A DNA stretch of 64,000 nt from Octopus sinensis (lineage: Eukaryota). Shown piece by piece: positions 8,889 to 62,406 of the stretch. The translations under genes were made by a program, and so were the position numbers. The stretch covers positions 127,968,001 to 128,032,000 of the forward strand of contig NC_043001.1 in assembly GCF_006345805.1 (NCBI RefSeq), given 5' to 3'. How positions within the stretch are numbered: the first letter of the stretch is position 1; every line of letters begins with the position of its first letter. The notes under the pieces are model-generated. The model did not search any database, was not told the origin of the DNA, and saw only the letters and a program-made list of their open reading frames with translations.

Positions 8889-10048
8889 ATGTCACCTCAC
8901 GGAATCAAAGGAACAGGCAAGAAAAATAAGTGCTCATCACTTAGTGTTAATGGACCAAAAATGCTTGCAAAGAAAAAAAGGAAGATTTTAAGTGAGACTC
9001 CTGATGTTGATGTGTCTGGAAAAGCAACCAGTTGGCGTGGTCTTAAAATTGAATCCTCAAATGATCTTAAAGAGAAGATACTGAAGCAGTTAACATGTCC
9101 ATCTCGCCAGTACAAAGGGAGAGATGGCGAAATAGAGCTTCCTCCCAAGAAAAAGCGGAAATTTCAAAACAATGGCAGTGTTGAAACTGATTCAGATGTA
9201 GAGAAAACTAGTCGGAGAAGCAAACTGATGAAAAAACAGTATCTGGAAAAGCCTAGCTCTAAAATGCAAAGATGGAAGAAGCTGGCTGAAGATGCTGAAT
9301 TCTATGGGTCTTCAAATTCTGCAAGCAAAGGCAAAAAGAAAAAGAAATTAATGACTGTAAATTATGATGATGGGGTTTGTGTTTATGATTTGCACACACC
9401 CAGCAAATTGAAGAAAATGAAACGGCAAAAAGGTGCTAATCACATAGTCAACAAAAAGAAGGTTCATATTGGTAAACGTGTCATTACTCCTCACAAGGGG
9501 GGCCGAAAGGAAGCCATGAAACCAAAACTCAATGTCAGCAGCAGTCGTTTAAAACTTTTGTCTAAAAAACAACGAAAGAAGCTTGAGGAAAATTATTCAC
9601 TGCAGATATACAGTGATGTGGAATTGTCAGACAGTGATGTGTCTGCTGATGGACAAAACGTAATTTCAATCAAGAAGGGCAAGTTTTCAATGCCTGACAA
9701 GTGGAGTTATCGACAACTGCTGAGCAAGAAAAAGGCCAAGTCTAAGAAAGAACAGGAATGCAATGTTGGCAAGATAAAAAAGTCAAAGCAGCATCACGAG
9801 CATGTTTTGGAGGATGAAGATTCCTACGACAACATTGAAGAAGCTTCTTCTGATGAAGATTTATCAGAAGTTGATGATGATGACGAGGATGAGGATGAGG
9901 TTGATGATGCTGAAGAGGATGATGATGATGAGGAGGAAGAGGATGATGATGATGATGAGGATGACGACGACGAAGACAGTGAGGCCCAAATGAGTGATGA
10001 AAGACTTGGTGCAGAAAAGAAAAATGTATCAAATCAGAATTTACCCAA
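8889..10048 (+). CDS. NOL9: NOL9 first coding exon: Lys-rich then Asp/Glu-rich disordered N-terminus (exon starts at 8712 with 5'UTR)
   Basis: Acceptor tttattaacAG at 8710-8711; 386 codons + AA, donor AA|GTAAGT at 10049; phase 2 matches exon 42929. Confidence 0.8.
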
Positions 10049-11731
10049 GTAAGTTATTTATTTCTCATTACTTGATTACTTTTTTTTTTCTTTGTTCTTT
10101 ATGACTGGTCTTTTCTAAAATATGCATAACATAAAGTCACTGGACTTTGTCTTGTCAGCATAGGTATTTTTGTTGGTTTTTTTTTTTTTTTTTTTTGCTT
10201 CTTATATCATTTATGTATACAAAGAGAAGAGGAAACATTAATGGTTAAGTGAGAATTGAATTTGCATCTCTTGGTTTAATGCCCAAGTGCTTCCCAAATT
10301 AAACTTCTGTTAATTTGTTCCTGTAACAGTCTAAGCATTATTCATATATGTAGTTAAAATCTTTTCGAAATGTGTGCAAAGGCTTGTAAATTTACATGAA
10401 AATATTGATGAAGCATGAAGTAGATGATATCAAAGAGACTCAAGTTAACAGTATGTATATTATCATTTTAGAAATGTTTATACATAAAAGTAGACAGTAT
10501 CTCATGTGTTAATGACGCAGGCACAAGGAAGATATATTGAAACAAAAAGTGAGCTAACTACGAATTGAACCTCAGTTTGTTTTTTTTATAAGCCATTCAG
10601 TTAAGCTGCAAGATCTTTTACCAGTTTATCATGTTTATAAATTTAGATGTATTTAATCACATGTTCCTTTGATTATGATATTCTAAGGGTTACTGATTTC
10701 CCCGTCTTTTGTGTTTCATATTTCTAATCGTCATTACATAAATTTTTATAGTACTTATTAATATATTGTTTTAATGTTAAAGATTCTGGTGTGAAAGTTT
10801 TTGTTTTGATATCTCAAAATCGGTTCAGATGGTTAGTTTCACTTCAGATCTTATTTTATTTAATGCTTGGTTTCAGGTTACGAGATTTAGATCTCAAATT
10901 CTTCAGTTTTATTCAGTATCTTATAGACTGATTTTCAGATTAAGTACATTATCGTTATTGTCTACTACACCATCTCTCTAACAGAATATGCTTTTTTTCT
11001 TTTTTTTTTTTACACTTCTTAGTAGTACTATGTCTGCTCAGTTGATATCATTCAGTAACTTCCAAGTTGCAGCATCACCCTTATCACAAATATCATTTTG
11101 ACATCATTGCAGTTCTCATGCTCTGTTCATCAGTGCCACTTTTTCATACCTGATACATATTACTTCATCTACATGCATCTAACATGTTCCTCTCTAAAGC
11201 AGTTTTACAGTTTTATTCTTTTAAGCTACACACCTATGACAGACCAGTCACACATTTGATACATTCATTGTGCTTCTTGGATGGAGAATGACTGATCAAA
11301 TTTTTCTTTTTGTTTAAGGCAATCAGAAAATAAGTTAGGATAATATTGCCTATGACTTATATATTTCCCCTCAAAATTCTTGGTTAATTCCTTTAGCTTG
11401 ATTGAATGTTTTGTACCTTAACTTTTGGTTGGTTAGAACTTTGGTGAATTATATATAATTTTAGCAAAATAATACTTGGTCAGTTGCAGATATTTACAAA
11501 TGGTACATATATTTGCTACTAAATCCTAGATTCTATTTCTGCTTGACATATTACTATTAACTGTCTATCTCATCAGCTATTATCTTAAACCAACTTTGCA
11601 TTATCTTAAGGTTAAAGCTTTTAAATTTTTCTGGTATTGTTGAGAAAGCAATGTCTTTGCTGGTTCATTCAGCATGCAACTATTGAAGACTTACATTAAT
11701 GCACACATTTCATACAGTATAGATATTCTTT

Positions 11732-27249: not shown

Positions 27250-27311
27250 TATTTTCTTGTAGAGATATATATATGTATGTATGTATATATGTAGATATAT
27301 ATATATGTATG

Positions 27312-27353
<42 letters not shown>

Positions 27354-27665
27354 TAAGATATCACATTCTTTTTTTCATCAGTAAAGCAATTTCTGTATTT
27401 TTTAAATATTTCCTAATCTTTTTTTTTTTTGTTACGTCTACAAAGCCTACCTTTTAGTACTTAGGGTTTTTAAAACTTTCTTACAGGGTATCTACTTTGG
27501 TGAATTTTGGCTAAATAGTTAAAAATTAATATTTCTGTTGCAAATCTAATTAAAGACATCTGTCTTCATCAATGGTCTTTCTTAGTTTTTTTTTTTTCTA
27601 TAATATATTTGAGTAAATTTCAAAATGAGAACTTATGCATAACTTTATGTTGAAAAAAAAAAGAC

Positions 27666-30260
27666 ATGCAAACATTAAAAAATCTTATGTGTACTTTTCA
27701 AGCCCAATTTTTTATTGGCAGTGGAAATTGGGAAATGATTAATGACGAGCGATGTCGAGAAGTGACTCAAGAAGACTATGGTAGTGCCTGGAAACAACAT
27801 GATGGAGACACAACATCAATTGTACTGCATCCATGGCCTCATGGTAACAACTTTCAAGAACAGCAGCCACATTCCCATCAAGTGCTACAGAAAAATAAAC
27901 ATGCTGGTCTTGCGAACACTTCTAATTTGTCAATTATTGGTGGTGTTCTTGACAGTACACTATCAGGACACAACAACCCAGGTATTTCTCATCCTTCGCT
28001 TCAACATTATCATTCAGAACAAGAAAAGCAACAGTCTCAATTTACTGAGAATCACATTCAGGTGCAAGATGGTTCTGTACGGCATTTTGGTGATCAAACT
28101 CAAATATACAATACCTATAATGTTGATGTCAAATCCCAGACTCATATCTCAAATAACCAAACTGATCCCAACCAATCTTCCCAACCATGTCATCTACAGC
28201 AATACACTGACTTAAATCACACTCAGTCTCAACCAAACGGTTCTTCGTTTGGTGCTTCTAAAGTAAAATATTATTACCCTGCAAGCTTTGGTAAAGAAGG
28301 TATTTTAGAGGTTGAAAGGGCTTTGCAACCTGTTCCTCCCGAAGAAGTACTGACTCAAGGTTTCCGCATAAATATAAAGCGATGTGATATGGCTACTTTA
28401 GTTGGGGCCAACTGGCTCAATGATGAAATCATCAATTTTTACATGAATATTATTGTTCAAAGAAGTAAAATAGATGGCTATCCTTCAGTCTACATTCCAA
28501 GCACATTCTTCTTTCCCATGGTTATGAAACGAGGCTATAATGGTGTAAGGCGGTGGACCAAAAATGTAGACATATTTGATCATGATTTAATGCTGATACC
28601 AATTCATTTGGAGAGTGAAAATCATTGGACTCTCATAGCTGTTGATTTCCTTCAGTCTAGTATCTGCTATTATGACAGTTATTTACAAGACAGGGATGAT
28701 GCTATGGATGCAATTCTTAATTATTTGAGAGAAGAAATGAAAACCAAAAAGAATATTGAAATGGACACCAACTGTTGGGTGAAAGTGAATATGAAGAATA
28801 TACCACTTCAAGAAAACATGTCTGATTGTGGTGTCTTCAGTTGTATTTATGCCGAGTACATCAGCCGAGGAGACAAAATGGATTTTACTCAAGAAGATAT
28901 GCCCTATTTCCGACGGAAAATGGTTTATGAAATTCTTAATCATAAAATAGTTAATCACAGTCCAAGGGATCTTGAGAATATGATTTCTGATGACCTTTTA
29001 GACGATATTACTTCCGCAAATGAAAATGGTCATATTCTGACACCAGATATTGCCACAGCCGTGATCCAAAATGGTCTACCTGACAATTTCCAGGGTCCTA
29101 CAAAGGTTAGTGAGGAGGCTATGGGCTTAGCTGCTGTTTCAAAAGACACAGAAGGAGTCAGAGACGTTGAAAAGACCCAGAATGGTTCTACAGGTGGAGA
29201 AATGGAAGAAAAGGCTTCACCTGCAGAAGCAGGTGAAGAAACTAGTAGAAAACATAAAACCAATTTGATCTCTGAAATTAAAAGAATTGTCAGTCTCTTT
29301 GATGATGTCAGTGAGGAAAAGAGAAATCTACTTGAGAGTCAACTCTTTCAGTTGCTCAGAGAAAATCTGCAGAATTCTAACCAGAAAGCCAAGAAATTTA
29401 AAATCAGGCATAATGATCTTGCAAGCATAATGTCAGTGATTGAAAAGCATTCAGGGGAAAATTCTGAGAGTGATGAATTAAATAGTGTCAGTGATGACAG
29501 TGCCAGTAGTAGTACTGTCAGCAGTAGTTCTAGAACTACCACCAGTAGTACTGTTTCAAGTGATAAAGGAATAAAAAGCTCTGATGACACTGAAGTTTCA
29601 AGCCTTTCTGATAATTCAGAAGAGTCAGGTTTGTTTAATATTATGAAGGAAATGGAGAAAATGTTTCTTTCTTTGGCTGCTTTTGTACGAATTATTTGCA
29701 AAACTGACCAAGAACTGTTGAAAGGCAAAGCGGGAGAAGCGTCCAGTCGATCAAATTCTGTGATAAAAGGGATTAGCTACATTACGTCTAAACTAGAAAA
29801 CATAAACCAAAGGTTGAAGAGTCAATCTATTCTGAAAACTGCTGCACAGCAACACATGACATCTCAGCATGACAGAAAAACATCCAAAAAATGTATGTCG
29901 CAACGTTTAGTGATCCAGAAAAAATCGAGGAGAAATGAAAGGGACATTATGAAAACCAAACATTGTTTGAGAAATAGCGTTACATTTTCAAACCAAGTTG
30001 GCAGTGAGGAGGACATCTCCAATGATGAAACTACTGAAGCAAGACTTTTTACCAGTGCAGCAAAAAACCTTGGCATCAGTCTTGAAAGTGGAGCTTATTT
30101 GAAAAAGCTTCACTTACGAAAAAACTTATTGAAAAAATTTCCATTGCCAGCAGATGTATTTGATTTGAATTGCCAGTTGCAGGACAAAGCTCACAAGCAA
30201 CATGCATTCAAAAGCATGGTGCGGTCAGATCATTGTAAAAAAGGAAAAAAGAAAAAGTAA
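27666..30260 (+). CDS. Intronless SENP1-like SUMO protease (Ulp1/peptidase C48) ORF nested in the NOL9 intron; true 5' boundary probably a splice acceptor at 27702 or 27721
   Basis: 864 open codons; domain 28362-28949 has WLNDEIINFYM, VRRWTKNVDIF, PIHL..NHW (His 28623), YYDS (Asp 28674), QENMSDCG (Gln 28809, Cys 28827) and FTQEDMPYFRRKMVYEIL; triad spacing as in SENP1. Confidence 0.93.
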   Translation: MQTLKNLMCTFQAQFFIGSGNWEMINDERCREVTQEDYGSAWKQHDGDTTSIVLHPWPHGNNFQEQQPHSHQVLQKNKHAGLANTSNLSIIGGVLDSTLSGHNNPGISHPSLQHYHSEQEKQQSQFTENHIQVQDGSVRHFGDQTQIYNTYNVDVKSQTHISNNQTDPNQSSQPCHLQQYTDLNHTQSQPNGSSFGASKVKYYYPASFGKEGILEVERALQPVPPEEVLTQGFRINIKRCDMATLVGANWLNDEIINFYMNIIVQRSKIDGYPSVYIPSTFFFPMVMKRGYNGVRRWTKNVDIFDHDLMLIPIHLESENHWTLIAVDFLQSSICYYDSYLQDRDDAMDAILNYLREEMKTKKNIEMDTNCWVKVNMKNIPLQENMSDCGVFSCIYAEYISRGDKMDFTQEDMPYFRRKMVYEILNHKIVNHSPRDLENMISDDLLDDITSANENGHILTPDIATAVIQNGLPDNFQGPTKVSEEAMGLAAVSKDTEGVRDVEKTQNGSTGGEMEEKASPAEAGEETSRKHKTNLISEIKRIVSLFDDVSEEKRNLLESQLFQLLRENLQNSNQKAKKFKIRHNDLASIMSVIEKHSGENSESDELNSVSDDSASSSTVSSSSRTTTSSTVSSDKGIKSSDDTEVSSLSDNSEESGLFNIMKEMEKMFLSLAAFVRIICKTDQELLKGKAGEASSRSNSVIKGISYITSKLENINQRLKSQSILKTAAQQHMTSQHDRKTSKKCMSQRLVIQKKSRRNERDIMKTKHCLRNSVTFSNQVGSEEDISNDETTEARLFTSAAKNLGISLESGAYLKKLHLRKNLLKKFPLPADVFDLNCQLQDKAHKQHAFKSMVRSDHCKKGKKKK

Positions 30261-31019
30261 ACTCTTACACACTCACAAAAAAAAAAAAAAGAAAGAAAAA
30301 AATATCATTTACCTGTCTGTCTACCTTTCTATCATCTGATTTTTCAAATTTTCATTGAGTTACTTTCTCATACTTCATTAATAGGCATACAGAAACACAC
30401 ATATACATATGCATGCATGCATACATACGTAAATACCTGTCAGCATCTTTTATACCTTGCAATCAACTAAATTGCTTATGATAATCTGAAAATACAGCAA
30501 AAGATGTACACAAGTAGTCTAGGTCTGTTCATTTTTATACATGCAGAATTGGAAAACAAAATGAGCAGCTTTAAAATCATTTCAAAGCTCTTTAAATTCA
30601 ATGTTAGTTTTGTCTGTTTTCTCTCTCTCCTATGTCCCATTACCACTGCCTCCGTCGCTGCTGTCGACCAGCAAGATCAACACTTACCACCATTACTCCT
30701 TTCCTTCCACTGTCAGCAACTCTTTGATTTCTTCGTCTTGTTTTGCTCATGAAACCCATCTCTGCTGCTATTGTTGCAATGACATACTGTTCTCTGTTGA
30801 GTTCTTTGTAACAATCAAACCATTAAGCCCACTAAGACAGACATTGTAGGGAAATGTAAAAGATCTGTACCACGTCTCTTTCGTCGTTTGATGCAAAATG
30901 CATGGTAGTTTCTCTTACTCCAAAGACCATTGATGAAACAAAGTCAACTAGATGCTTTTTGATTGGCATATTGTTCATTTACTTTTCATTTATCCGAAAC
31001 TTTTTTTTTTTTGATTCCC

Positions 31020-42928: not shown

Positions 42929-43458
42929 GCATATCTGGATAGCTCGATGTGAAGACCAAGCCATTGTAAATCTCAAACACCCATTGGAAAGAAACTTGGC
43001 TGGATTCTGTGAAATCAGTGTTTTATCTGGTTGTATTTGCTTATTAGATGCGAAAATAGTGCCAGATGGACAGTGGCATCCATTATATTCTCCACACGAC
43101 CATACACCTCTCAAGTTGGTGACTCTACATTCGTGTGGTAAGGATGGTCTTGTCATCACCAAAAAGAAAGTTGCATCGATGCTTTCAGAGTCAGACAATT
43201 TTGTAAACAGAATTGATTCTAATTCAGTAATTCTGTTGGTCCGCCGACTTCGGTGGGCTTTCACTGATTACATAAGCACCATTCGTCCATATCAGAGTCT
43301 CTTTCAAGGACTGAAGGAGGAAGACAAAACTACATGTAACCAGACCCTTCAGCCATTTGGTATAAGTTTCATTGCTAAATCAAATATGCCAGATTATACT
43401 TCTTCAGCTGAGGAACAGCATTTTATAGAAAAATGGGAGTCATTAATAAAAAGTAAAG
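42929..43458 (+). CDS. NOL9: NOL9 exon: N-terminal (pre-kinase) domain
   Basis: Acceptor tttttcAG, donor AAG|GTTTGT; 530 nt; GFCEISVLSGCICLL..LYSPHDHTPL resembles NOL9 GICRVTCLYGQVQVF..FSVYTHSCL. Confidence 0.85.
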
Positions 43459-50655: not shown

Positions 50656-50905
50656 TTATTTTATAGCTTTGAGATTTCGATTATGTGATTGCTTATTTTT
50701 AAAATGACATTGTAGGGTAAGTCTGAGAAACCGTATTTGGCCAATGTGAACATGAAACAAATAGAATATTTTTGCCAGATATGGCCAGTTTGAATGCTAA
50801 AGGGTTAATAGTAATATTTTGATAATAATTTCTCTTACAATGTTTTTTGAATATGAAATGTTTGACTTTCTAATTTATGGAGTTCATTTTTAACTTAATT
50901 TTCAG

Positions 50906-50990
50906 AGAATCCAAGAATTTTGTTGTGTGGATCAACAAATACAGGAAAATCTACATTTTGCCGAAGATTGTTAAATATCTGCCTTAATAT
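50906..50990 (+). CDS. NOL9: NOL9 exon with Walker A (NPRILLCGSTNTGKSTFCRRLLN)
   Basis: ttttcAG and AT|GTAAGT; 85 nt, phase 1 to 2; GxxxxGKST as in Clp1/Grc3 kinases; missed by the ORF track. Confidence 0.95.
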
Positions 50991-51295
50991 GTAAGTAAAG
51001 CTGTCTTTTATTTATTTATTTTTGTTTTTGTGAATTATATAAAGAACTGCAATTAAGATGTATTTAGTAGAATTAATGATCAGATATGATTACAGAGTTT
51101 GCATTTCTAAGGAGGAAGGAATTGACAAAATGTGATTGAGAAAAAAAATATAGTATGATGAGTATTTTTAAATGTCAAAAGGAAAATTATCTGATTTAAT
51201 GACATTTGAGTTGATATTGAAAAAATGCAACTATATTGTTGGCCAAGATATGTGTGGTTAGTGTTTTTTTTAATGTAATTCTCTAGATTTTCTTT

Positions 51296-51537
51296 TTACG
51301 TGCCACCGGCACGTAAAAAGCACCAACCGATCGTGGCTGCTGCCAGATTCCCCTGGCACGTAAAAAGCACCCACTACACTCACAGAGTGGTTGGTGTTAG
51401 GAAGGGCATCCAGCTGTAGAAACACTGCTAGATCAGACTGGAGCCTGGTGCAGCCTCCTGGCTTCCCAGACCCCGGTCGAACCGTCCAACCTGTGCTAGC
51501 ATGGAAAATGGACGTTAAACGATGATGATGATGATGA
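51296..51537 (+). mobile_element. V-domain SINE (family C)
   Basis: Core plus (gat)n tail; reverse complementary to 50493-50655. Confidence 0.88.
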
Positions 51538-52068
51538 AATATAGGTGAAAGTCTTTAACTTTTTTAGCATCCAGTCCAGTTTAGTTTGTCAAATGCAATG
51601 CTTAAAATCTTCATATTGTTTTGAGCTAATCATGCATTATTTTATAGCTTTGAGATTTCGATTATGTGATTGCTTATTTTTAAGGTACTGAATTAACTTA
51701 CTAATGTGGGCATGTCTAGTTAAGAAGTTTTCTTTGTAATCACAGGCTTTGTATTAAGTCCCACTGTGCAGCATTTTGGGGGTAAGTGTGATCTGCCATG
51801 ACCTCCAAACCAATGAATGCTTTGTGAGTAAATGTGGTTGACAGAAACTATGGAACCCTATTGTGTGTGTGTGTGCATTTTCGTCTTTATATTTGTTCTG
51901 TACTCCACCTTGTGATAGCCAACGTTGGTTTGTTTACTTCACTGTAACTCAGTGCTTTGGCAAGATAAAGACCAATAGAATAAATGCCTAAAACCTAAAA
52001 GAACGAGTGGTTTTACTTGAATGAGTGTAACAAGTAAAAGAATAAAAGGGTTTGTTCGGGTTGTGAGT

Positions 52069-52297
52069 TTAACCCTTTAGTGTTCGCATTATTCTACCAA
52101 AATTAATGCTTCTTCATCCACATTGTTTTGAATTGATCATGCATTATCTTGTAACTATGAGATTTTGATGAGGTAGCTGTTAATTTTTTAAAAGATATTG
52201 TAGGGTTGGTGTGAGAGACCAGATCTGGCCAGTTTGAACATAAAACAGGCAGAATGCTTTTAGCCGGATATGGCCGGTTTAAATGCTAAAGGGTTAA
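52069..52297. mobile_element. TTAA MITE
   Basis: TTAAccctttag ... atgctaaagggTTAA. Confidence 0.88.
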
Positions 52298-52429
52298 ATA
52301 TGCCATAGATATTTCATTGTATTTCTGGATAAGACATTTAATTCTGTTTAATATGAGTTCATCTAACTCTCATTAACATGTAGCAAATTATTTTCTGGAA
52401 CAGTTACCCATGATAAGACATTATTTAGT

Positions 52430-54240
52430 TCATGGAGATTTGTCTCTCAATTTCAGCTACTAGAGCCTATGAACTCTTGTGACCATTCCTTCATGTGTTC
52501 CTATTTGGCCCTCCCTGCGTCTTTTCTTCTTTTATCACTCTTCATCCCCTCAAAACTGTTCTCTCATTGATGCTGTATCTGACGAAAATGACCATGTCCT
52601 TTCTTCTTGTGATTCATGAAAGGATTGAATTTGAGAGGTCTCTAATCTAACTATTGATTTTAACCCTTTAACATTCAAACCAGCTATATCTGATCCAAAT
52701 ATTCTATCTGTTTTATGTTCAAACTGACCAGATTCAGTCTCTCAGACCTACCCTACAATGCCATTCTAAAAGTAAAACAACAGCATCATCAAAATCTTGA
52801 TGCTGTGAGATAATGCATAATTAATTCAAAAACACTGTAATTAATAAGCTTTGTGTTTGATAAAGTAATCTGAATGCTAAACGGTTGAAGACCAGCTCTA
52901 ACTGTATGAAATTTCTCTTCTCTCCTATTATGTATTTATATTATGAATACTGTGTGTGAAGATTTAGAGGGTCATGTAATATAACTTTTAGTTTCTTACT
53001 CTGTTGTCAGTATTTGCTTCTATGTTATCTCTCCCTTGTTGAACATACTCATCTAATCTCAGTGTTTTTTTTCTGTTCTGAGGCCATCTAGTCATTAGAA
53101 ACCTGAACTCTGGTGCAGTACCCAGAAAGGCTGTTCAGTCAATAGTTATATATCAGGATATTTATAGCGACATGTTGTGCATGGAAGGAGTCTTTGCATG
53201 TATATCCGATGTGTTTTCCTGGGGTCACATGAAGAGCCATTTGTTACATTAGATCTTTGGCTTCCGACTAGAAGTATTTTTTTTTTGATTTTACTATTTA
53301 TGAAATGGTTTCACTTACTTATAGAGAAAGAAATCTAAATTCATCTCTTAAACCTCTGATTTGGTCTTTCATAAATAAGTGAGGTAGGTCTTTGTTGTAA
53401 CTCTTATTTTGTTCAATTTTTCCCACTACAAAGTCTTGACATCTTAGAGACTTGATAGTTCTCATTTGGAAACAGTTATCTCCCTTCTTGTTGAATCCGA
53501 TGGCTTTGGTGTCTGTAATAATCTTCCAGTTACTTTTAAATATTCTGACCATTCCTTCATGTGTTTTTATTTGGCCCTCCTACATTCTACTGTGCGTCTT
53601 TTCTTCTTTTATCACTCTTCATCCCCTCACTCTCATTGATGCTGTATCTGACAAAAATGACCATGTCCTTTCTTCTTGTCCTTCAAAAAACATTGTAGAG
53701 ACTAGTGATTTCATTGCTCACAATGTTAACTGACTTATTTTCTAAAATGCAAATTCTGCTTGGAAACCCTGTTTTAATCTCTCACTCTCTTTCTCAGTCA
53801 ACTTCCCTATTTGTTATCCAGACCATGAGAACCATAATCTTTTCCTTGTTGATCTTTGCCTCATGTCTGATTCTATTATTTGCTTTATCTTTCCCATGAA
53901 CCACTTGATACACTGGTTGCATATTTCTCTGAATATATCTGCTAATTTCTTCTCGCACTGTCTTCTAATTCTCTGTAACTTATATTTATTAACTTGATAA
54001 CTGAGATTCTTTTTGCAATTTTCTCCATGATTCTCTTTCGGATAATTTCTTTCTCTTTTTGCTGATATAACAGAAAGCCTCCGTAGTTTATTTTGGATTT
54101 AGATGAGTATGAATTCTTTCATTCCTCATCAGAAATAACTTAGTTAAAACCACGTGACTTTCTTTGATTTTCTCTTGCTTTGCGTCTACTATTGCTCAGA
54201 GAAATTACTTTTCCCATCTTTATTGTGAAGACAACTCTTG
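52430..54240 (-). mobile_element. Highly decayed LINE (RT region), interrupted by a MITE
   Basis: Minus-strand remnant EIKTGFPSRIC resembles RT IKTGVRQGCIL; many stops; boundaries approximate. Confidence 0.45.
52660..52888. mobile_element. TTAA MITE, opposite orientation
   Basis: TTAAccctttaacattcaaaccagctatatc is the reverse-complement end of the 52069 copy. Confidence 0.8.
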
Positions 54241-54252
54241 AGAAAATAAACA

Positions 54253-54529
54253 TTTGGTAGACAGAAACTGAAAAGAAGCCTGTTGTATATATGTATATAT
54301 ATATATGCATGTGTGTGTTTGTGTGTCTGTGTTTGTCCCCCTAGCATTGCTTGACAACCGATGCTGGTGTGTTTATGTCCCCGTTACTTAGCGGTTCGGC
54401 AAAAGAGACCGATAGAATAAGTACTGGGCTTACAAAAGAATAAGTCCCGGGGTCGAGTTGCTCGATTAAAGGCGGTGCTCCAGCATGGCCGCAGTCAAAT
54501 GACTGAAACAAGTAAAAGAGTAAAGAGAG
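54253..54529 (+). mobile_element. 5'-truncated CORE-type SINE (family A)
   Basis: 3' half of the family A sequence. Confidence 0.88.
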
Positions 54530-54789
54530 TATCTTTTCTCATTATGCTGGGGAAGCACTGCAAGAAAGTCCTTGCAGGTGCTAAATCTCAGTGTATAGAG
54601 TGGACCAAATTTTGTTTTGCTACAATTGGCTGAATCATTACCTTACAAATTTGTATTCTTGTGTATTAGAAATGATTATTGTAAGGCAGAGAGCTCTCAG
54701 AATCATCGGTCCATTGGACAAAATGCTTCATGACATTTCTTCCTGTTTTTCTGAGTTCAAATCCCACCAAGGTTAATTTTGTCTTGTGC

Positions 54790-55082
54790 CGGTGGCACGT
54801 AAAAAGCACCATCCGATTCGTGGCCATTGCCAGCTTCGACTGGTCTCCGTGCCGGTGGCACGTTAAAAGCACCATCCGATCGTGGCCGTTTGACAGCCTC
54901 GTCTGGCACCTAAAAAGCACCCACAACACTCGCGGAGTGGTTGGCGTTAGGAAGGGCATCCAGCTGTAGAAACACTGCCAGATCAGACTGGGCCTGGCGC
55001 AGCCTTCTGGCTTCCCAGACCCCAGTTGAACCGTCCAACCCATGCTAGCATGGAAAGCGGACGTTAAACGATGATGATGATG
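54790..55082 (+). mobile_element. V-domain SINE (family C)
   Basis: Subunits, core and (gat)n tail. Confidence 0.88.
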
Positions 55083-55292
55083 ATTTTTATGGGTTTGATA
55101 TAATAAAGCACTAGTCAAGTACTGGGTTGATGTAATTAGCTAAGCTTCTTCCCTAAAGAATTGCTTTGTCTTCCGTCAGAATTCAAAATGTTGTTGTTAC
55201 TGTTGATGCTGCTGCTGTTGAATATTGGAAGAGTCATTTGAGAATCAGAAAAATTGCTTTGGGTGTATTTGTTTTGACTCTTTGTTTTGAGT

Positions 55293-55520
55293 TTAACCCT
55301 TTAGCATTAAGATTACTCTGTCAAATGTAATGCTGATCTATTTGCACTGATTTGAATTAATCAAGTATTATCTAATAGCTTTGGGATTTCGATGATGTGA
55401 TTGTTCATTTTTAAATATACATTGTAGCATAGATGTAAGAGATGAGATCTGAATGGTTTGAACATAAAACAGGTAGAATCTTTGGGCTAAATATGACCAG
55501 CTTAAATTCTAAAGGGTTAA
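55293..55520. mobile_element. TTAA MITE
   Basis: TTAAccctttagcat ... ctaaagggTTAA. Confidence 0.85.
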
Positions 55521-55909
55521 AATCCTACCAAGATCAACTTTGTCTTACATCCCTCCAAGGTCTATAAAATAAAGTACCAGTGAAGTATGGTTTTTGATGT
55601 AATCAGTGAACCACCTACCCCAATGTTGCTGGTTTGTGCCTCGCTTAGAAATAATTATTCAAGACAGCTGGCTAAATTGTTAGTGTCAGAGGGGAAAACA
55701 ATACCTTGTGGTATTTGTTCCAATTCTTTGTTCCGAGTTGAAAACCTTCCAGGGTTAACTTTATCTTTCATCGTTCTGAGTTCAATGAAATAAAGTCTGA
55801 GTTTGATGAAATAAAGTGTGTGTTAAATAAATGTAATCAATTAATCCCTCCTTTAAAATTGCTTGCCTCATGTCTAAATTAGAAACCATTATTTATTTAT
55901 TTATTCCAG

Positions 55910-56007
55910 AAAGAAAAGTGTCTATTTTCTTGACTGTGATCTTGGTCAAACAGAATTCACACCACCAGGCTGTGTATCCTTGAGTTTGGTGAAAGATTAT
56001 GTTCTAG
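55910..56007 (+). CDS. NOL9: NOL9 exon with Walker B (VYFLDCDLGQTEFTPPGCVSL)
   Basis: ttattccAG and G|GTAAGC; 98 nt, phase 2 to 1; DxGQxEFTPPG is the Clp1/NOL9 signature. Confidence 0.96.
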
Positions 56008-56426
56008 GTAAGCTATGTGTATAAAAATATTTCTAATTGTATTGAAATGTTCCATAATTCCAAACCAAATTATTGGTTGTATATATTGTTGTATCCTTCA
56101 GTTGGTGAACATTTCCACTCTTTGCCTCTTGCCACTTGACTGATAAGACTGAATAGAAATGGTATTTTATTTTGCAAAGTGAAAGCTAGATTATCAACCA
56201 CATGCTCATAAGTTCAAACTTTATTGCAGTCATTGGATTGTTTCCTTCACTTTGCTTACTTTGACTAAACAGAAAAAAAAAAATGGGCAAGTTCCAGTTT
56301 TGTTTCATGATTGAGTGTCAAGCCAGGAATTCACAGCCTTTGGTAGTTTAAAAGCTCTCTTTTACTGGATGGGAATAACTGTTTTATAAATGATTCACCT
56401 CAGGTTTTGAAGAGAGAGGTAAACCA

Positions 56427-56800
56427 TCATCATTGTTGTTTAACGTCCGCTTTCCATGCTGGCATGGATTGGATTGTTTGACTGAGGGCTGGCAACCCAG
56501 AAGGCTGCATCAAGCTTCAATCTGTTCTCGCAAAGTTTCTACAGCTGTATGCCCTTCCTATCACCAACCACTCCGAGAGTGTAGTGGGTGCTTTTTACGT
56601 ACCACCGGCATAGAGGCCAATCAGGCAGTACTGGCATTGATCATGCTTGAATGGTGCTTTTTACGTGCCATCAGCATGGGATGCAGTCAAGTGGCACTGG
56701 CAATGACCATGCTTGAGTGGTGTTTTTTACTTGCCACTAGCATGAGTGCCAATCAGGCAGTACTGGCATTGGCCACAACAGTGGCTTCACTTGATTCAAC
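56427..56800 (-). mobile_element. V-domain SINE (family C), diverged
   Basis: aacgtccgctttccatgctggcatgg tail, core and subunits. Confidence 0.8.
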
Positions 56801-58086
56801 AGGCCTTCACTAGTGCAGTTGATTGCCCAACGATTGAAAGGTATTCTTAAATGGGCTGGTTATGCTGCAGTGGCATAGGCTACGGTTACAGTTTCACTTA
56901 GTAAAATTTGTATAGAAATTACTGAAAGTGGTGAGGTCTTATCTATATAATTAAATTATATTGGATCTTGGTACATCATTAGTCATATTTTTGCTTGCTG
57001 ATAACACAATGACCTATACATCATATTTTATTCCAGACAGATGTATTTAAAATATAAATGTTGTACCTGGTTTAAATATTTTATGTCTAAGAAAAAACAC
57101 CACTTCTCTAAACAACCAGCACCCTCTCCATATCATCATATGCCATTTACTACTCCCCTAACCTCTCAATGCCCTGAAGGAGGCACTGTTAAGAAAGACT
57201 ACCCTAGAGTGTTGTAGACCATAGGAATATCACGAGATCTTAAGTTTAAGTTACACAACTGAGAAAAAATGCCAAATTTTATTAGAAATATAGATTACAG
57301 AGAGAGTGAGAAAATGCAGTTAGGGTATAGTCAATTTTTCTCTGGAGCTTATATATTCTCTTCTGGAATAAAACCTTAAATATAAGGGGGATAAGTTGAT
57401 GGTGTCACAGAAACAGTGGAATCCACTTGGTTAGCTGTAGGCATAGCATTTACTTTTCTTTTTCAGTGATCCTATCTGAGAAATGGAAATCATATATATC
57501 TCTGTCTTCTACTCCAGATGCTCTGTGAAGTGGTTGTAAGTGAACAAAGACTTGGGGTCCTTTCAGTTTTCTCAATGGAAACTAACAGAAGCCCATTGTA
57601 AATATATATATGTATGTATGTACATACGTACATGGTCTGATCAACAAGTAACAGGTCTCTTGCTATGGTAATGAAGCTAAAATATGCAGAATGAAACAGC
57701 TTGGCACAAATTGACTTGAATGCTTTTGCACATTCACATTTAGTTATAACATTCTCATTCACTTCCGATATTTTTAGCTGTGCTTAGAGGTAAAATGTGT
57801 AGTTGTCTCAAAAAAAGATAGGTTTTCAGCTGTGTAGGGTCTCCTCGATTGTATTGAGGAAGATGGAAAAATTTTCAATATGGTCATAATAGGTGACGTA
57901 TTGTGGGTTTGTGGCTATGACCCTGAAAACAAAGGCTCAGTCTTCACAGTGGAAGACCCCAACAAGATTTCAAGACATTGAGGAAATTCAAGAGAATGTA
58001 ATGAAACAATAAAAAAACCCACAGTAAATCAATAGTCTCTAATAGGATCTTTAAGCATTCTTATAAGAGTTTGGCATTGTTTACTA

Positions 58087-58313
58087 TTAACCCTTTCATT
58101 ACCAACCTGGCTAAAACCGGCTCTGGCTCTGAGTACAAATGTCTTCTTTTCATAAGTTTTGAATTAAAATCTTCCACCAAGCCTTAGTTACAATTTATGT
58201 TCTTAACACTAGCTGAATGGTAACCAAGTTATTTTACTAAATTCTTTGTATATTTAAAGTAATTGAAAGAAACACAGAGCATCTCAAAATAAATACAATA
58301 ATGAAAGGGTTAA
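58087..58313. mobile_element. Second TTAA MITE family
   Basis: TTAAccctttcatta ... taatgaaagggTTAA, 11-bp perfect TIR; interior differs from the 33174 family. Confidence 0.85.
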
Positions 58314-58454
58314 TACAGTATTTTGAATTTTTAAGTATTTCTTTAAGGTAACATACTAAATAAACTTATTTCACTCCTCCTTCTGTATCGTAAAATTTCA
58401 TCACTTTCTATATATTTGTAAAATTGAGATAACCTGATATATTTTGTTTTTCAG

Positions 58455-58488
58455 GCCCACCATTCTGTCACCAAAAAGAACCCATTTA
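58455..58488 (+). CDS. NOL9: NOL9 microexon (GPPFCHQKEPI)
   Basis: ttttcAG and TA|GTAAGT; 34 nt, phase 1 to 2; matches NOL9 GPPFTH. Confidence 0.93.
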
Positions 58489-59690
58489 GTAAGTATGCAG
58501 TGCAGCAAGGTTGCTCTTGTATTTGATATTTTTCTGTGTGTGTATTTGTTATTTTTATTGTTGAGTAACTGTGGTCAACTCTATTTGAGTAAAGCTTAAA
58601 GAGGTAGCTGATTAAACAATTCATTCAAATGGTGCTTTTTCAGCTATTGCATCCAATGTTTAATGTGGGACATTCATTTTATAGATAGTATTGAGATTTT
58701 TTTTTTCTTTTGGTGGGGAAGAGTTTGGCTGCCATGTTGTGGTGGTTGAATGACTAATTTGAGATATGTATTGTTTAATAAAAAATAGACATAAACAACG
58801 TAAGCCACAGATGACTGAGGTGGTATGGTTTCAGACCAGCAATCAAGAGTATGAGTGGTTGATAGTCTGTGACCATGTCATGGCACTTCTCTTTCAGTGA
58901 CTCAATTCTTTTTTGCGATAAGTTCACTTTGTTGTATGCTGTTTCTGGAGTAAGTTCACAGTGGCCCAATTCATTATGCAGTTTACCTTGCATGCTACAA
59001 GCTGTGTTACAGTATAGTGTATTTCACCAGATTAAATAGTGACAGCATTACAAAAACAGAAAAGTGTTTTGATAAATTTACAGTACTGCGTTCAGCTTTC
59101 TTCCATACTTACAAGTTGGACAAGGAGGGTCACTGCCAAGCTTTTTTACTTGTCTTAGATATTCTGTTATTAGCATATTTTTATATAATTCATTTTCAAT
59201 GCAAATGTTGCAAGGGTTTGTTCTAGTACAATATCTTGCCACTTGTTGTTGCAGTCCTTTTGTCACCTTTTCTCTGAGGTCCAGCACCTCTGAGCACCTC
59301 TGAGCTTAAACCTATATTTTTCCTACATCCTCTTCTCCTACTGGAGATTCCTTCTACTTAAATTGCTTATGTTAGTCTTGTTCTTATATATATATATATC
59401 TATTTTGGATGTATTTGGGGTACTTAGTTGTGCCCGTGACTTAGTATTTGCTTCTTCCATGGGTATCTCATTTATTTCTTTTGCCACATGTATCACTGAC
59501 GAAGAGAGGGCTCTTAGTAGCTAACTCTGAAATCGGTCTGATATGGTAATAATGGAATTTTTTAGAAATTTCTGTCAACCTTTTTTCGAGTAGCGTGCTT
59601 ATTGTGAAAAAATTATATGGTTAATGGACAATATGTCCAATTTTTTGGCATATTTGGCATTAGAAATTTTTTCCTTTGCCCTCATTTATG

Positions 59691-59725
<35 letters not shown>

Positions 59726-59855
59726 GATAAAATCTTATATGGTTTGCTCCTGCAGCTTTATATGTTATGGGATTCAGCTACATAGGCAAACACAACAACA
59801 ATAACAATTACCATAACCATGAATGTTACTGTTCATTTTTTTCTTTGATTTCCAG

Positions 59856-59992
59856 TAATATTTTTGTGGGTGATATCACACCTGAATCCAGTGCTAACCA
59901 TTACATGATCTGTATTCGCAATGTTATTCATTTCTACCTGAGATTATCTCCACAATTACCTTTGGTCATTAACACAATGGGCTGGATTAAAG
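59856..59992 (+). CDS. NOL9: NOL9 exon (NIFVGDITP..PLVINTMGWIK)
   Basis: tttccAG and G|GTTGGT; 137 nt; matches the conserved PLIVNTMGW motif. Confidence 0.95.
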
Positions 59993-60875
59993 GTTGGTTT
60001 TTTATTATTATTTTTCTACTGATTTGTGTGTTATTTCTAATTTAAATGTTTTTTTCATTCTTTTCATATATGTCCATGTAATCCCTATACACATGTACAC
60101 CTACTCATCTTCACAACACAAAACCATTGCATACACTAATAGTTTCTATAAACATTCTCTACTGATCTCACATTATGTAAGTCAGTTGCAGTGGACAACA
60201 CAGCTCATTCACAAAGTTTACTGCATTTTTCTGGTACAAAATTTTCCCAAAACGCCCCTAATGAGTGTTGGTAGATGGTGTAACATATGCTAGTGCCAGA
60301 TTTCTAGCATAAGCTATTGAAAGATCTGTGAAGTGTAGGAATGGCTGTGTGGTAAGAAATTTGCTTTGCCGGTCACATTTTTATTCCGGGTTCAGTTCTG
60401 CTGCGTTGCACATCGAACCATAGCCCTAGGCCAACAAAAAGTCATGTGAGTGAATTTGGTAGGTTAAAAACTGAAAAAACCCTATTGTGTGCATGGGTGC
60501 CTGTCCTCTTCACACTGTTTAACAACCCTGTAACTTAATGGCTTGGCAAAAGTGTACCAATAGAATAGTACCGAACATAAAAAGACAAGTATTGGGGCAA
60601 ACTTTTTTTCCCAGTTAAATACTTCAAGGTAATGCCCCAGCATGGTCGCAGTTCAGTGATTAAAGCAAGGTATATCATCGTCTCATTTAACATCTGTTTC
60701 CTTGTCGGCATAAGTTGGACAGTCTGACAGGAGCTGGTCAGCTGAAGAGCTTTTCGGGTTTCATGTCTGTTTTCGCATGGTTTCTATAGCTGGATGCCCT
60801 TCCTAATGCCACCCACTTCACAGTATACTGGCTGCTTTCATGTAGCACCAGCACCCACAAGCCTGCAAGATTAGG

Positions 60876-61258
60876 GAAGCACTCCGTCGGTTACGACGAC
60901 GGGGGTTCCGGTTGATCCGAATCAACGGAACAGCCTGCTCGTGAAATTAACGTGTAAGTGGCTGAGCACTCCACAGACACGTGTACCCTTAACGTAGTTC
61001 TCGGGGATATTCAGCGTGACACAGAGAGTGACAAGGCCGGCCCTTTGAAATACAGGTACAACAGAAGCAGGAAGTAAGAGTGAGAGAAAGTTGTGGTGAA
61101 AGAGTACAGCAGGGATCACCACCATCCCCTGCCGGAGCCTCGTGGAGCTTTAGGTGTTTTTGCTCAATAAACACTCACAACGCTCGGTCTGGGAATCGAA
61201 ACCGCGATCCTATGACCACGAGTCCGCTGCCCTAACCACTGGGCCATTGTGCCTCCAA
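60876..61258 (-). mobile_element. Young tRNA-derived SINE (family D) with 11-bp TSD, inserted into an older V-SINE
   Basis: Minus-strand head tggcccagtggttagg (A box) ... ggtttcgattccc (B box); TSD gcaagattagg at 60865-60875 and 61259-61269. Confidence 0.9.
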
Positions 61259-62248
61259 GCAAGATTAGGATCACTCAGCTGAAGTGGGATGCAGGAGACA
61301 TGCCTGTTTGCAAGGACAACCATGATTTTACTTAGCTTGTTTTCTCAAGAACAGCAAACTGCCAAACCACAGTTTCATTCAATGGACTTTTTAGTTGACT
61401 GAACATATTAGCAAATTTAAAAGTTTGGAAATGTCTCACTTTAAGTCTCACTCGAGACTTTTTAAGGGTTAGCAACTAATCGAAGCTGAAGTATATTTTA
61501 ATCTTACGAAAAAAAAAAGAAGCCAATCTTTGTGATGTAGTTTTAATAATGCTATTCATGTGAGGTGGTCATGAGAGATCAGCTGAAATGGTAAAAACTA
61601 GCATTTATAAGGACATATATGATTGGTGTAAATTATGTCTGACTTTCTCTTTGATATGTGTAGTGATTATGCCTTTGTGCTATTGAAGGAGACTATGTTG
61701 TTATTGATATAAGTGATTTACATCTACATTTCTACATTAGTGTGAAGGGTGGGAGATTTTGCATTTATTTTGGAGCAGTTGTTTTTCTTTTATTACTTTT
61801 TATCATTCCTACACCAACCATGTGAATCTTTATTTCCTTTTAATAATAATAATAATAATAATAATTGTGTACAGTGCTCAGGTGCACTACAACTCATCTA
61901 AAGTGTATATATAATCAGGTGTAGTTTCGGCGGATTTCGGAAAGCACGAGGGCCTTAAAGGATGCAGTGTCATGGCAGTCAACAACTGACGCAGGCAGTT
62001 TATTCCATGCTTCAGCAACTCTGAGCGTGGAAAAATGTTTCCGAAAGTCATGGGAGCTGTGTTGTTTTCTGACTTAGTAGGCATGTCCACGTGTGTTTGC
62101 CATGCCAGATAAGATTGCTCAGGAAAACAGGGCACAGGTTAGAAATTATGACCTCATGATTAGTAGTCCAGCACATTAACCTCACAGCTAATGTGGTCTT
62201 TGTTTCATTTACATATTGATGTTTATATCCTTTGGTTTTATTTTACAG

Positions 62249-62406
62249 GACCTGGGAAACAGATGCTTGATGGCATACTTAATTTAATCACTCCAGACCA
62301 GGTTGTTTACCTTTATTCACCTAAAATAAAATTAGAGCCTAAGGAACTGCAGCCTTCTGTTGTTGGTCAGAACCCATGGAATTTTCCTGGAGAGAAAAAT
62401 GAACTT
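62249..62406 (+). CDS. NOL9: NOL9 exon (GPGKQMLDGILNLITPDQVVYL...); gene continues beyond the window
   Basis: ttttacAG and CTT|GTAAGT; 158 nt, phase 1 to 0; resembles NOL9 LIRLLSPSHVVQ; no stop reached. Confidence 0.9.

What the first reader, a model, noticed from the sequence alone, without database searches (positions are those of the whole stretch)
27666..30260. Possible chimeric isoform: NOL9 N-terminus spliced in frame to a nested SUMO protease
Seen: the first ~18 codons of the SENP ORF are AT/pyrimidine-rich and intron-like, with an in-frame TGA at 27651. They contain two AGs. Acceptor ttttttattggcAG (27720-21) is phase 2, so the NOL9 exon-2 donor (AA|gt at 10048) gives AAT and a 1232-aa fusion. 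Acceptor tacttttcaAG (27701-02) is phase 1, so the microexon donor at 15313 (G|gt) gives GCC and a 1252-aa fusion. Established: in mammals the nucleolar SUMO protease SENP3 associates with NOL9, LAS1L, PELP1, TEX10 and WDR18 in 60S maturation. Inference: alternative terminal-exon choice may let one locus make either the NOL9 kinase or a protease carrying the same Lys-rich/acidic nucleolar-type N-terminus, a convergent nucleolar SENP built from a SENP1-type domain. AGs are common, so phase compatibility alone is not proof. A standalone 841-aa product from ATG 27735 is the alternative.
Basis: partly seen in the sequence, partly recalled or inferred. Interest (0 to 1): 0.88.

Follow-up and report, generated by a model that had tools for sequence, protein, structure and literature searches.

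The report
NOL9–SUMO protease alternative-exon fusion in cephalopods
In octopus, the gene for the ribosome-maturation kinase NOL9 also makes a second protein, in which its N-terminal tail is spliced to an intronless SUMO-protease exon sitting in a NOL9 intron; a distant cephalopod does the same, so the arrangement is old and real, though databases already hold it as an unnamed predicted isoform.

Summary
The window is Octopus sinensis chromosome DNA. Joining 8889-10048 to 27722-30260 translates exactly to RefSeq XP_029637096.1, a 1232-aa "uncharacterized protein LOC115212363 isoform X1" with junction NLPN|GNWEM. O. bimaculoides has the same model (1235 aa).

The strongest evidence comes from an unidentified, distant cephalopod. 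One RNA-seq contig encodes the fusion (1248 aa) and four encode NOL9 (948 aa). They are 99.6-99.9% identical over the 5'UTR and first 389 codons, then diverge exactly at the conserved AA|GT donor.

The acceptor region is the only conserved intron sequence. The octopus ATG at 27735 is not conserved: the first Met is codon 70 in the two other species. The codons before that Met are under purifying selection (dN/dS 0.16).

The protease exon is intronless, whereas octopus SENP1 has about 17 exons. It is SENP1/2-type with H, D, Q and C intact (dN/dS 0.019) and carries a novel 430-aa helical C-terminal extension.

The 1252-aa microexon variant has no support. Nucleolar targeting and a rixosome role are inference only. 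This is a new, unpublished example of a TRIMCyp-like captured terminal exon.

The parts
8889..10048 (+). Shared coding exon. ATG at 8889; 386 codons plus 2 nt. Encodes a Lys/Arg-rich (21%) and Asp/Glu-rich (21%) N-terminal region used by both the 930-aa NOL9 product and the 1232-aa protease product.
   Evidence: Both products start here. No Pfam domain. Conserved motifs in three cephalopod lineages. Homologues found only in cephalopod NOL9 and fusion proteins. Composition.
10049..10054 (+). Shared 5' splice site GTAAGT (AA|GT, phase 2).
   Evidence: Same position and phase in genomic contig L010 (AA|GTAAGC). It is the divergence point of transcripts L002 and L015-L018.
27694..27721 (+). Conserved 3' splice region; 27700-27721 reads AAGCCCAATTTTTTATTGGCAG, with the acceptor AG at 27720-27721.
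   Evidence: 22 nt are identical and 28 nt are 93% identical to L004 from a distant cephalopod. No other similarity was found in the ~490 nt of L004 intron compared with the ~720 nt upstream of the octopus acceptor. The 74 nt upstream are identical in O. bimaculoides.
27722..30260 (+). Alternative 3'-terminal coding exon: 845 codons plus stop, no introns. Encodes the protease half of the fusion.
   Evidence: Joined to 8889-10048 it translates exactly to P0001. dN/dS against O. bimaculoides is 0.17.
27666..27721 (+). The first 18.7 codons of the mechanical 864-aa ORF. This is intron, not coding sequence.
   Evidence: L004 has an in-frame TAA 7 codons before the acceptor. Prokaryote-style gene callers produced 864-, 871- and 875-aa 'proteins' starting here or at a GTG.
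28410..28937 (+). Peptidase_C48 (Ulp1/SENP) catalytic domain of SENP1/2 type. Keeps His (HLESENHW), Asp (YYDS), Gln and Cys (LQENMSDCG).
   Evidence: Pfam E = 8e-39. Aligns to SENP1 2ckg. AF2 pLDDT above 90 and TM 0.95 to SENP2. dN/dS 0.019.
28938..30257 (+). C-terminal extension of about 430 aa, absent from other SENPs. Ser-rich linkers plus predicted long helices; ends KKGKKKK.
   Evidence: Only P0001-P0003 cover it. AF2 helices at exon-product residues 501-573, 634-713 and 770-805. dN/dS 0.19. No match to SENP1 or its locus.
30277..30302 (+). A-rich tract (A14 G AAA G A7) 17 nt after the stop. Possibly a poly(A) remnant of a retrocopy; unproven.
   Evidence: There is no AATAAA or ATTAAA before 31421.
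42929..43458 (+). Next NOL9 coding exon (Cupin_NOL9 region). Its acceptor TTTATTTTTCAG|G has the same phase 2 as the protease exon. The 3' end is approximate.
   Evidence: Joining exon 2 to this exon reads NLPKHIWIARCEDQ, as in Argonauta NOL9.
50878..62406 (+). Further NOL9 exons, approximate from tblastn: 50878-51018, 55911-56009 (DCDLGQTEFTPPG), 58364-58486, 59857-59994 (INTMGWIKG), 62239-62406. The gene runs past the window end.

Best explanation
The 864-codon ORF is not a free-standing gene. From 27722 it is an alternative 3'-terminal exon of the NOL9 locus.

Transcripts begin at the NOL9 promoter and include the exon with ATG 8889. From the single donor at 10048 they splice in one of two ways. 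Splicing to 42929 and onwards gives the 930-aa polynucleotide kinase NOL9. Splicing to 27722 gives a 1232-aa protein. That protein carries NOL9's 386-aa basic/acidic, apparently disordered N-terminal region, a 200-aa linker, an intact SENP1/2-type cysteine protease domain and a new 430-aa helical C-terminal extension. The fusion contains none of NOL9's folded domains.

The arrangement predates the split between octopods and a distant cephalopod lineage. It probably arose when an intronless, most likely retroposed, copy of a SENP1/2-type gene landed in the NOL9 intron and was captured by the upstream donor.

Shown: gene structure, splice junction, shared 5' end, conservation, purifying selection, intact catalytic residues and fold.

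Inferred: the protein is a SUMO protease, and the shared N-terminus with its conserved KKKRK clusters and acidic tract delivers it to the nucleolus or pre-60S/rixosome environment where NOL9 works.
For: 1. Translating 8889-10048 + 27722-30260 gives XP_029637096.1 exactly. O. bimaculoides XP_014773087.1 / UniProt A0A0L8HE73 has the same architecture. In both genomes a NOL9 product (930 or 933 aa, with Cupin_NOL9, CLP1_P and NOL9_C) shares the start codon.
2. Logan contig L002 (SRR24189497, 3963 nt) encodes a contiguous 1248-aa fusion.
3. Contigs L015-L018 (SRR24189490, SRR24189498, SRR27666060, SRR27666070) encode a 948-aa NOL9. L016, the one whose 3' end was read, ends in an A-run.
4. L002 and L015-L018 are 99.6-99.9% identical over L002 nt 1-1377, then diverge right after ...TTGTCAAA.
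5. L002 starts matching the unspliced contig L004 exactly at the base after the AG.
6. The donor AA|GTAAG is conserved in genomic contig L010. The acceptor region is conserved across lineages.
7. The protease acceptor and the NOL9 exon-3 acceptor have the same phase.
8. In the two other species the first in-frame Met of the exon is codon 70. The 68 codons before it have dN/dS 0.16, against 0.175 for the whole exon.
9. dN/dS between O. sinensis and O. bimaculoides is 0.019 for the catalytic domain and 0.19 for the C-terminal extension.
10. Pfam C48 E = 8e-39. SENP1/2 score E about 1e-61 with H, D, Q and C aligned. AF2 plus Foldseek give TM 0.95 and rmsd 1.0 A to SENP2.
11. Octopus SENP1 has about 17 exons over 35 kb, with at least 5 introns in the catalytic domain, whereas this exon has none.
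12. In mammals NOL9 and SENP3 are both enzymatic subunits of the rixosome (PMC3279398, PMC12292926).
Against: - No junction reads from octopus itself were examined. The octopus evidence is two automated gene models.
- Contigs L011/L012 (95% identical to window 27153-30409) and L003-L009 run unspliced from intron into the exon. If those runs are RNA-seq, an unspliced or internally initiated transcript also exists. Whether they are DNA or RNA could not be determined.
- No canonical poly(A) signal lies within 1.1 kb of the stop, so the 3' end is undefined.
- The species behind L002 and L015-L018 is unidentified.
- Retroposition rests on intron absence only. There is no target-site duplication and no similarity outside the catalytic domain. 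The NJ tree does not place the copy next to cephalopod SENP1 (14/100).
- Localisation, substrate and SUMO specificity are untested.
Confidence: 0.85

Rival explanations
1. A standalone nested gene. An internal promoter in the NOL9 intron drives an unspliced mRNA, translated from ATG 27735 (841 aa) or ATG 27666 (864 aa). The fusion would then be minor or an annotation artefact.
For: - Octopus has in-frame ATGs at 27666, 27687 and 27735.
- Contigs L011/L012 and L003-L009 join upstream intron to the exon without splicing, in several sequencing runs.
Against: - ATG 27735 is absent outside Octopus. The first Met is codon 70 in L002 and L004, yet the preceding 68 codons are conserved with dN/dS 0.16.
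- L004 has a TAA 7 codons before the acceptor.
- The 875-aa 'protein' P0002 starts at a GTG chosen by a prokaryotic gene caller.
- The acceptor region is conserved.
- A spliced fusion transcript exists.
- The unspliced contigs may simply be genomic DNA.
Confidence: 0.1
2. The fusion is an artefact: a read-through or chimeric gene model in octopus and a de Bruijn-graph chimera in L002.
For: - P0001 and P0133 are automated predictions.
- L002 is a single contig from one run.
Against: - Three independent sources give the same in-frame junction at canonical GT/AG sites that are conserved in position and phase.
- An assembly chimera would not break exactly at a donor and an acceptor while keeping the frame.
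- The pre-Met coding conservation independently requires an upstream start.
Confidence: 0.03
3. A longer 1252-aa variant is the real product: exon 2, then the 41-nt segment 15273-15313, then the upstream acceptor at 27702/27703.
For: The splice-like signals exist (cag|...AAAG|gtaaga and ttttcaAG|CC) and the frame works, reading QRKAQFFIGSGNWEM.
Against: - No protein or transcript shows it.
- The fusion in the other species joins exon 2 directly (KLSN|GDWEN).
- Argonauta NOL9 lacks the segment.
- Including it would frameshift NOL9 and give a stop after about 24 codons.
Confidence: 0.04
4. The ORF is a decaying retropseudogene or transposon-borne Ulp1 protease with no host function.
For: - The ORF is intronless, sits in an intron and is followed by an A-rich tract.
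- C48 proteases are carried by some transposons (my own knowledge).
Against: - 845 open codons are maintained in at least four species at an orthologous position.
- Catalytic-domain dN/dS is 0.019, with 86-89% identity across lineages whose overall identity is about 45%.
- The catalytic residues are intact.
- It is single-copy in the window.
Confidence: 0.01

Closest known systems
TRIM5-CypA (TRIMCyp) fusions of owl monkeys and macaques; also Drosophila jingwei
   Same: An intronless copy of one gene inserted in or next to a host gene is spliced to the host's upstream exons as an alternative terminal exon. This replaces the host's C-terminal domain while the host isoform persists (PMC2279257, PMC6677749; jingwei from my own knowledge).
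   Different: - This case is much older: it is shared by distant cephalopod lineages, against lineage-specific events in primates.
- The captured part is an enzyme with a new 430-aa C-terminal extension.
- The donated host part is only a disordered N-terminal region.
- The retroposition hallmarks are eroded, so the origin is inferred from intron absence alone.
Human SENP1 / SENP2 (Ulp1-branch SUMO proteases)
   Same: The catalytic domain is 42-48% identical, with E about 1e-61 and TM 0.95. H, D, Q, C and both tunnel Trp residues are conserved.
   Different: - The catalytic domain is internal, not C-terminal.
- There is a two-residue insertion before the catalytic His (HLESENHW against HLGVHW).
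- QQMNGSDCG has become LQENMSDCG.
- The N-terminus is borrowed from NOL9.
- The domain forms its own long-branched clade.
Human SENP3 (nucleolar, rixosome-associated SUMO2/3 protease)
   Same: SENP3 works in the same complex as NOL9: PELP1-WDR18-TEX10 plus LAS1L, NOL9 and SENP3 (PMC3279398, PMC12292926). It also has a non-catalytic N-terminus that governs localisation (PMC4281951).
   Different: - It is not an orthologue: E = 1.6e-37 against 5e-62 for SENP1.
- SENP3 is recruited through a disordered segment of PELP1 (PMC11976907, PMC12292926), not by sharing a polypeptide with NOL9.
- Any functional parallel is hypothesis only.
Alternative last exon / intronic polyadenylation isoforms
   Same: One promoter and one donor serve two mutually exclusive downstream exon sets with different 3' ends.
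   Different: The two products here share no folded domain and have unrelated enzymatic activities (kinase against protease). The poly(A) site of the short isoform was not located.

Membership tests
Peptidase C48 (Ulp1/SENP), SENP1/2 subgroup | Sequence match to the Ulp1 catalytic domain above the curated threshold | tested here: met
   PF02902 scores 134 bits against a cut-off of 20.7, E = 8e-39. SENP1 5e-62 and SENP2 2e-61 score better than SENP3 1.6e-37 and SENP5 5e-36.
Peptidase C48 (Ulp1/SENP), SENP1/2 subgroup | Catalytic His-Asp-Cys triad plus oxyanion Gln | tested here: met
   In the alignment to SENP1 2ckg, nHW, yyDs, lQ and sdCg line up with the SENP1 catalytic residues. All four are invariant in the 23-sequence alignment.
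Peptidase C48 (Ulp1/SENP), SENP1/2 subgroup | Ulp1 fold | tested here: met
   AF2 pLDDT is above 90 over residues 180-435. Foldseek against SENP2 2io1 gives TM 0.95-0.96 and rmsd 1.0 A.
Peptidase C48 (Ulp1/SENP), SENP1/2 subgroup | Activity on SUMO rather than NEDD8 or another ubiquitin-like protein | not testable with these tools
   Needs a biochemical assay.
SENP3/SENP5 nucleolar subgroup | Orthology to SENP3/5 | tested here: not met
   The domain is closer to SENP1/2 by about 25 orders of magnitude in E-value. It forms its own clade next to SENP1/2-type sequences.
SENP3/SENP5 nucleolar subgroup | Nucleolar localisation and association with pre-60S or the rixosome | not testable with these tools
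   Inferred only from the shared NOL9 N-terminus and its basic and acidic clusters.
NOL9/Grc3 polynucleotide kinase | CLP1_P P-loop kinase domain with Cupin_NOL9 and NOL9_C | tested here: not met
   The fusion protein has none of these. The locus's other product does. The fusion is therefore not a NOL9 family member, only a product of the NOL9 gene.
Retrogene-derived chimeric gene (TRIMCyp / jingwei type) | Intronless copy of a multi-exon parental gene family | tested here: met
   845 codons lie in one exon. Octopus SENP1 has about 17 exons, with at least 5 introns in the catalytic domain.
Retrogene-derived chimeric gene (TRIMCyp / jingwei type) | Located in a host-gene intron and spliced in frame to the host's upstream exon(s) | tested here: met
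Retrogene-derived chimeric gene (TRIMCyp / jingwei type) | Poly(A) remnant, target-site duplication and an identifiable parent | tested here: inconclusive
   There is an A-rich tract 17 nt after the stop. No similarity to SENP1 was found outside the catalytic domain. Sister grouping with cephalopod SENP1 appears in only 14 of 100 bootstraps. Target-site duplications were not searched for, because the age makes them unlikely to survive.
Alternative last exon isoform pair | Same 5' end and donor, with mutually exclusive terminal exons | tested here: met
   L002 and L015-L018 are identical to nt 1377 and then diverge. The two acceptors have equal phase.
Alternative last exon isoform pair | Own polyadenylation site downstream of the proximal terminal exon | tested here: inconclusive
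   There is no AATAAA or ATTAAA between 30261 and 31420. The contigs end in low-complexity sequence.

The most novel reading that the evidence does not exclude
Cephalopods have hard-wired a SUMO protease to the rixosome pathway. The NOL9 gene alternately produces the ITS2 kinase or a SENP that carries NOL9's own N-terminal targeting region. This natural 'Rosetta-stone' fusion would mirror the mammalian NOL9-SENP3 partnership. The splice choice at one donor could then set the kinase-to-deSUMOylase ratio during 60S maturation.
Probability: 0.3. Interest if true: 0.75.

Novelty: new member of a known kind. Interest (0 to 1): 0.62.

Why it matters
- The fusion links, within one gene, two enzyme types that in mammals meet only as separate subunits of the rixosome. 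That is independent evolutionary evidence that putting a SENP where NOL9 acts is advantageous.
- It suggests a direct experiment on what the poorly understood NOL9 N-terminal region does: targeting, or something else.
- It is an unusually old and well-preserved case of a captured intronless gene copy becoming an alternative terminal exon, in a lineage known for transcriptome plasticity.
- It is a practical warning for annotation. ORF-based or prokaryote-style gene calling reports 864-, 871- and 875-aa 'proteins' that begin inside an intron.

Tried and rejected
- Homologue search with the exon-2 peptide was swamped by low-complexity words and gave one hit. A later profile search solved this.
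- A search with concatenated NOL9 exon peptides returned only vertebrate and plant NOL9. It confirmed NOL9 identity but gave no cephalopod sequences.
- Looking up the run accessions in the literature did not identify the species or the library type.
- BLAST of the pre-catalytic region and the C-terminal extension against octopus and Argonauta SENP1 and the SENP1 locus found nothing. There is therefore no extra support for a retrocopy, nor for the idea that the extension derives from a former 3'UTR.
- The L002 5'UTR has no similarity to the window.
- A poly(A)-signal scan found none near the stop.
- Rfam and tRNA scans of the window were empty.
- The pseudogene/transposon reading was rejected on selection and conservation.
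- The microexon variant was rejected for lack of any support and because it is incompatible with the NOL9 frame.
Full report
**Source and observation.** The window is Octopus sinensis chromosome sequence (GCA_006345805.1, CM016863.1). There is an 864-codon ORF at 27666-30260 with an in-frame TGA at 27651. The acceptor TTTTTTATTGGCAG ends at 27721. The donor CCCAA|GTAAGT follows 10048. A Peptidase_C48 domain covers ORF residues 249-424 (E = 8e-39). NOL9 coding exons lie downstream at 42929-43458 and at about 50.9, 55.9, 58.4, 59.9 and 62.3 kb. The ORF therefore sits in the 32.9-kb intron that follows 10048.

**The predicted fusion exists in databases.** Translating 8889-10048 joined to 27722-30260 gives 1232 residues identical to XP_029637096.1, 'uncharacterized protein LOC115212363 isoform X1'. 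O. bimaculoides has XP_014773087.1 / UniProt A0A0L8HE73 (1235 aa) with the same layout. In both genomes a 930- or 933-aa product with Cupin_NOL9, CLP1_P and NOL9_C starts at the same ATG. No paper in the searchable library mentions NOL9 together with octopus.

**Independent transcript evidence.** A profile of the exon-2 peptide, searched against 1.84 billion representative proteins, found only cephalopod sequences:
- P0003, a 1248-aa fusion.
- P0139, a 948-aa NOL9 with all three NOL9 domains.
- Argonauta hians NOL9-like X2, 930 aa.

P0003 lies on a 3963-nt contig from SRR24189497 (L002). P0139 lies on four contigs of about 3.4 kb from SRR24189490, SRR24189498, SRR27666060 and SRR27666070. L016, the one whose 3' end was read, ends in an A-run. 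L002 and these contigs are 99.6-99.9% identical over L002 nt 1-1377, which covers the 5'UTR and 389 codons. They diverge immediately after ...TTGTCAAA. L002 then continues TGGAGATTGGG (N|GDWEN), while the NOL9 contigs continue CCGCCAG (N|RQCEK). One locus in a second, distant cephalopod therefore makes both mRNAs from one donor. The species could not be identified.

**Splice-site conservation.**
- Genomic contig L010 carries the homologous exon ending AA|GTAAGC.
- Contig L004 is from a third species whose protein is 69% identical to P0003 over the aligned protease exon. It holds the protease exon preceded by 2 kb of unrelated sequence.
- Similarity of L004 to spliced L002 begins at the base after its AG.
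- The 22 nt AAGCCCAATTTTTTATTGGCAG are identical to octopus. No other similarity was found in the ~490 nt of L004 intron compared with the ~720 nt upstream of the octopus acceptor.
- The NOL9 exon-3 acceptor (TTTATTTTTCAG|G at 42929) has the same phase as the protease acceptor. Either choice therefore stays in frame.

**Fusion or standalone product.** Octopus has an ATG at 27735, but it is not conserved. In L002 and L004 the first in-frame Met of the exon is codon 70. The 68 codons between the acceptor and that Met have dN/dS 0.16, the same as the whole exon at 0.175. L004 has a TAA seven codons before the acceptor. The 875-aa P0002 begins at a GTG picked by a prokaryotic gene caller. These codons must therefore be translated from an upstream start, which means through splicing.

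Unspliced contigs do exist: L011/L012 at 95% identity to window 27153-30409, and L003-L009. I could not tell whether they come from DNA or RNA. A co-existing standalone transcript in octopus is not excluded, and I give it about 10%.

**The microexon variant.** The 41-nt segment 15273-15313 has splice-like borders and the 1252-aa arithmetic is right. However, including it frameshifts NOL9. Argonauta NOL9 reads NLPK|HIWIAR without it, and the other species' fusion joins directly. I found no support for this variant.

**What the protein is.**
- The catalytic domain matches human SENP1 (5e-62) and SENP2 (2e-61) much better than SENP3 (1.6e-37) or SENP5 (5e-36). His, Asp, Gln and Cys align.
- The AF2 model has pLDDT above 90 across the domain. 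It superposes on SENP2 at TM 0.95 and rmsd 1.0 A.
- Between O. sinensis and O. bimaculoides, dN/dS is 0.019 in the catalytic domain, 0.19 in the C-terminal extension, 0.61 in the pre-catalytic linker and 0.47 in the shared exon.
- In an NJ tree the four orthologues form a 100%-supported clade on a long stem. They are 86-89% identical to each other but only 46-51% identical to any SENP1/2. They are not reliably sister to cephalopod SENP1 (14/100).
- Clade-specific features are a two-residue insertion before the catalytic His (HLESENHW), LQENMSDCG in place of QQMNGSDCG, and a roughly 430-aa C-terminal extension. The extension has predicted long helices (residues 501-573, 634-713, 770-805 of the exon product) and a conserved KKGKKKK end. 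Other SENP1/2 proteins end with the catalytic domain.

**Origin.** Octopus SENP1 (XP-type model P0023) has about 17 exons over 35 kb, with at least five introns inside the catalytic domain. The nested exon has none over 845 codons. That pattern, its position in an intron and an A-rich tract 17 nt after the stop fit a retroposed copy captured by the upstream donor, as in TRIM5-CypA (PMC2279257). Intron absence is the only firm hallmark, because nothing outside the catalytic domain resembles SENP1 or its locus.

**Mechanism and function.**
- Shown: one donor, two acceptors of equal phase, two products sharing a 386-aa N-terminus. That N-terminus is 21% Lys+Arg and 21% Asp+Glu, has no Pfam domain, and carries conserved KKKRK, P.KKKRK and NKKKV..GK motifs plus a 35-residue acidic tract.
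- Established elsewhere: the mammalian rixosome contains LAS1L, NOL9 and SENP3 as enzymatic subunits (PMC3279398, PMC12292926). SENP3 acts on pre-60S factors (PMC4281951). The NOL9 N-terminal domain is disordered in the cryo-EM structure (PMC11976907).
- Inferred: the shared N-terminus targets the protease to the nucleolus or pre-60S, giving cephalopods a NOL9-linked SENP analogous to SENP3 but not orthologous to it. Localisation, substrate and SUMO specificity were not testable here.

**Verdict.** The structure already exists in RefSeq and UniProt as an unnamed prediction, and I found no published description. It is a new member of a known kind, a captured intronless copy serving as an alternative terminal exon. 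It is noteworthy for its age and for joining two rixosome-type enzymes in one gene. Interest 0.62.

Noticed in passing
window 1-182, 23055-23220, 25477-25789, 36525-36771, 45025-45203, 45808-46051, 47201-47530, 48534-48803, 50492-50647, 51354-51537, 54818-55084, 56425-56708, 60766-60854: An interspersed repeat of about 270-290 nt occurs in at least 13 copies in both orientations, 71-85% identical, throughout the NOL9 introns. It looks SINE-like. No tRNA or Rfam match was found. It produces many spurious ORFs with recurring peptides such as LDALPNANHS.
   Followed up: partly
L015-L018 / P0139 residues 390-423 against window 42929: In the other cephalopod, NOL9 carries about 34 extra residues (RQCEKQQHDQKESEESREPQTQCLSQQRQKIKQV) between the shared exon and the Cupin region. 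Octopus and Argonauta NOL9 lack them. This may be an extra exon or an extended exon.
   Followed up: no
Logan contigs of cluster P0139 (P0141 85 aa and P0144/P0145 870 aa on the same ~3.38-kb contigs): Some NOL9 transcript contigs are split into an 85-aa and an 870-aa ORF by a frameshift inside the A-rich KKKRK-coding run. The likely cause is a homopolymer assembly error, but a real variant is not excluded.
   Followed up: no
L003-L008, first 35 nt: These contigs begin with T19-21 followed by GCAAAATTTTATT. On the opposite strand this reads AATAAAATTTTGC followed by poly(A). It may be the 3' end of an antisense transcript or retroposed element about 2 kb upstream of the protease exon in that species.
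   Followed up: no
window 27280-27345 and 30400-30440: TA/CA-type microsatellites flank the protease exon. They coincide with the ends of, or an indel in, contigs L011/L012 from the related octopus. This explains where those assemblies break.
   Followed up: partly
window 30236-30260 and the orthologues' C-termini: The protein ends KKGKKKK, encoded by an A-rich run, and an A14/A7 tract lies just downstream. The ending is conserved in all lineages (GKKGKKKK, GKRGKKKK). This raises the untested idea that the C-terminus derives from a retrocopy's poly(A) tail.
   Followed up: partly
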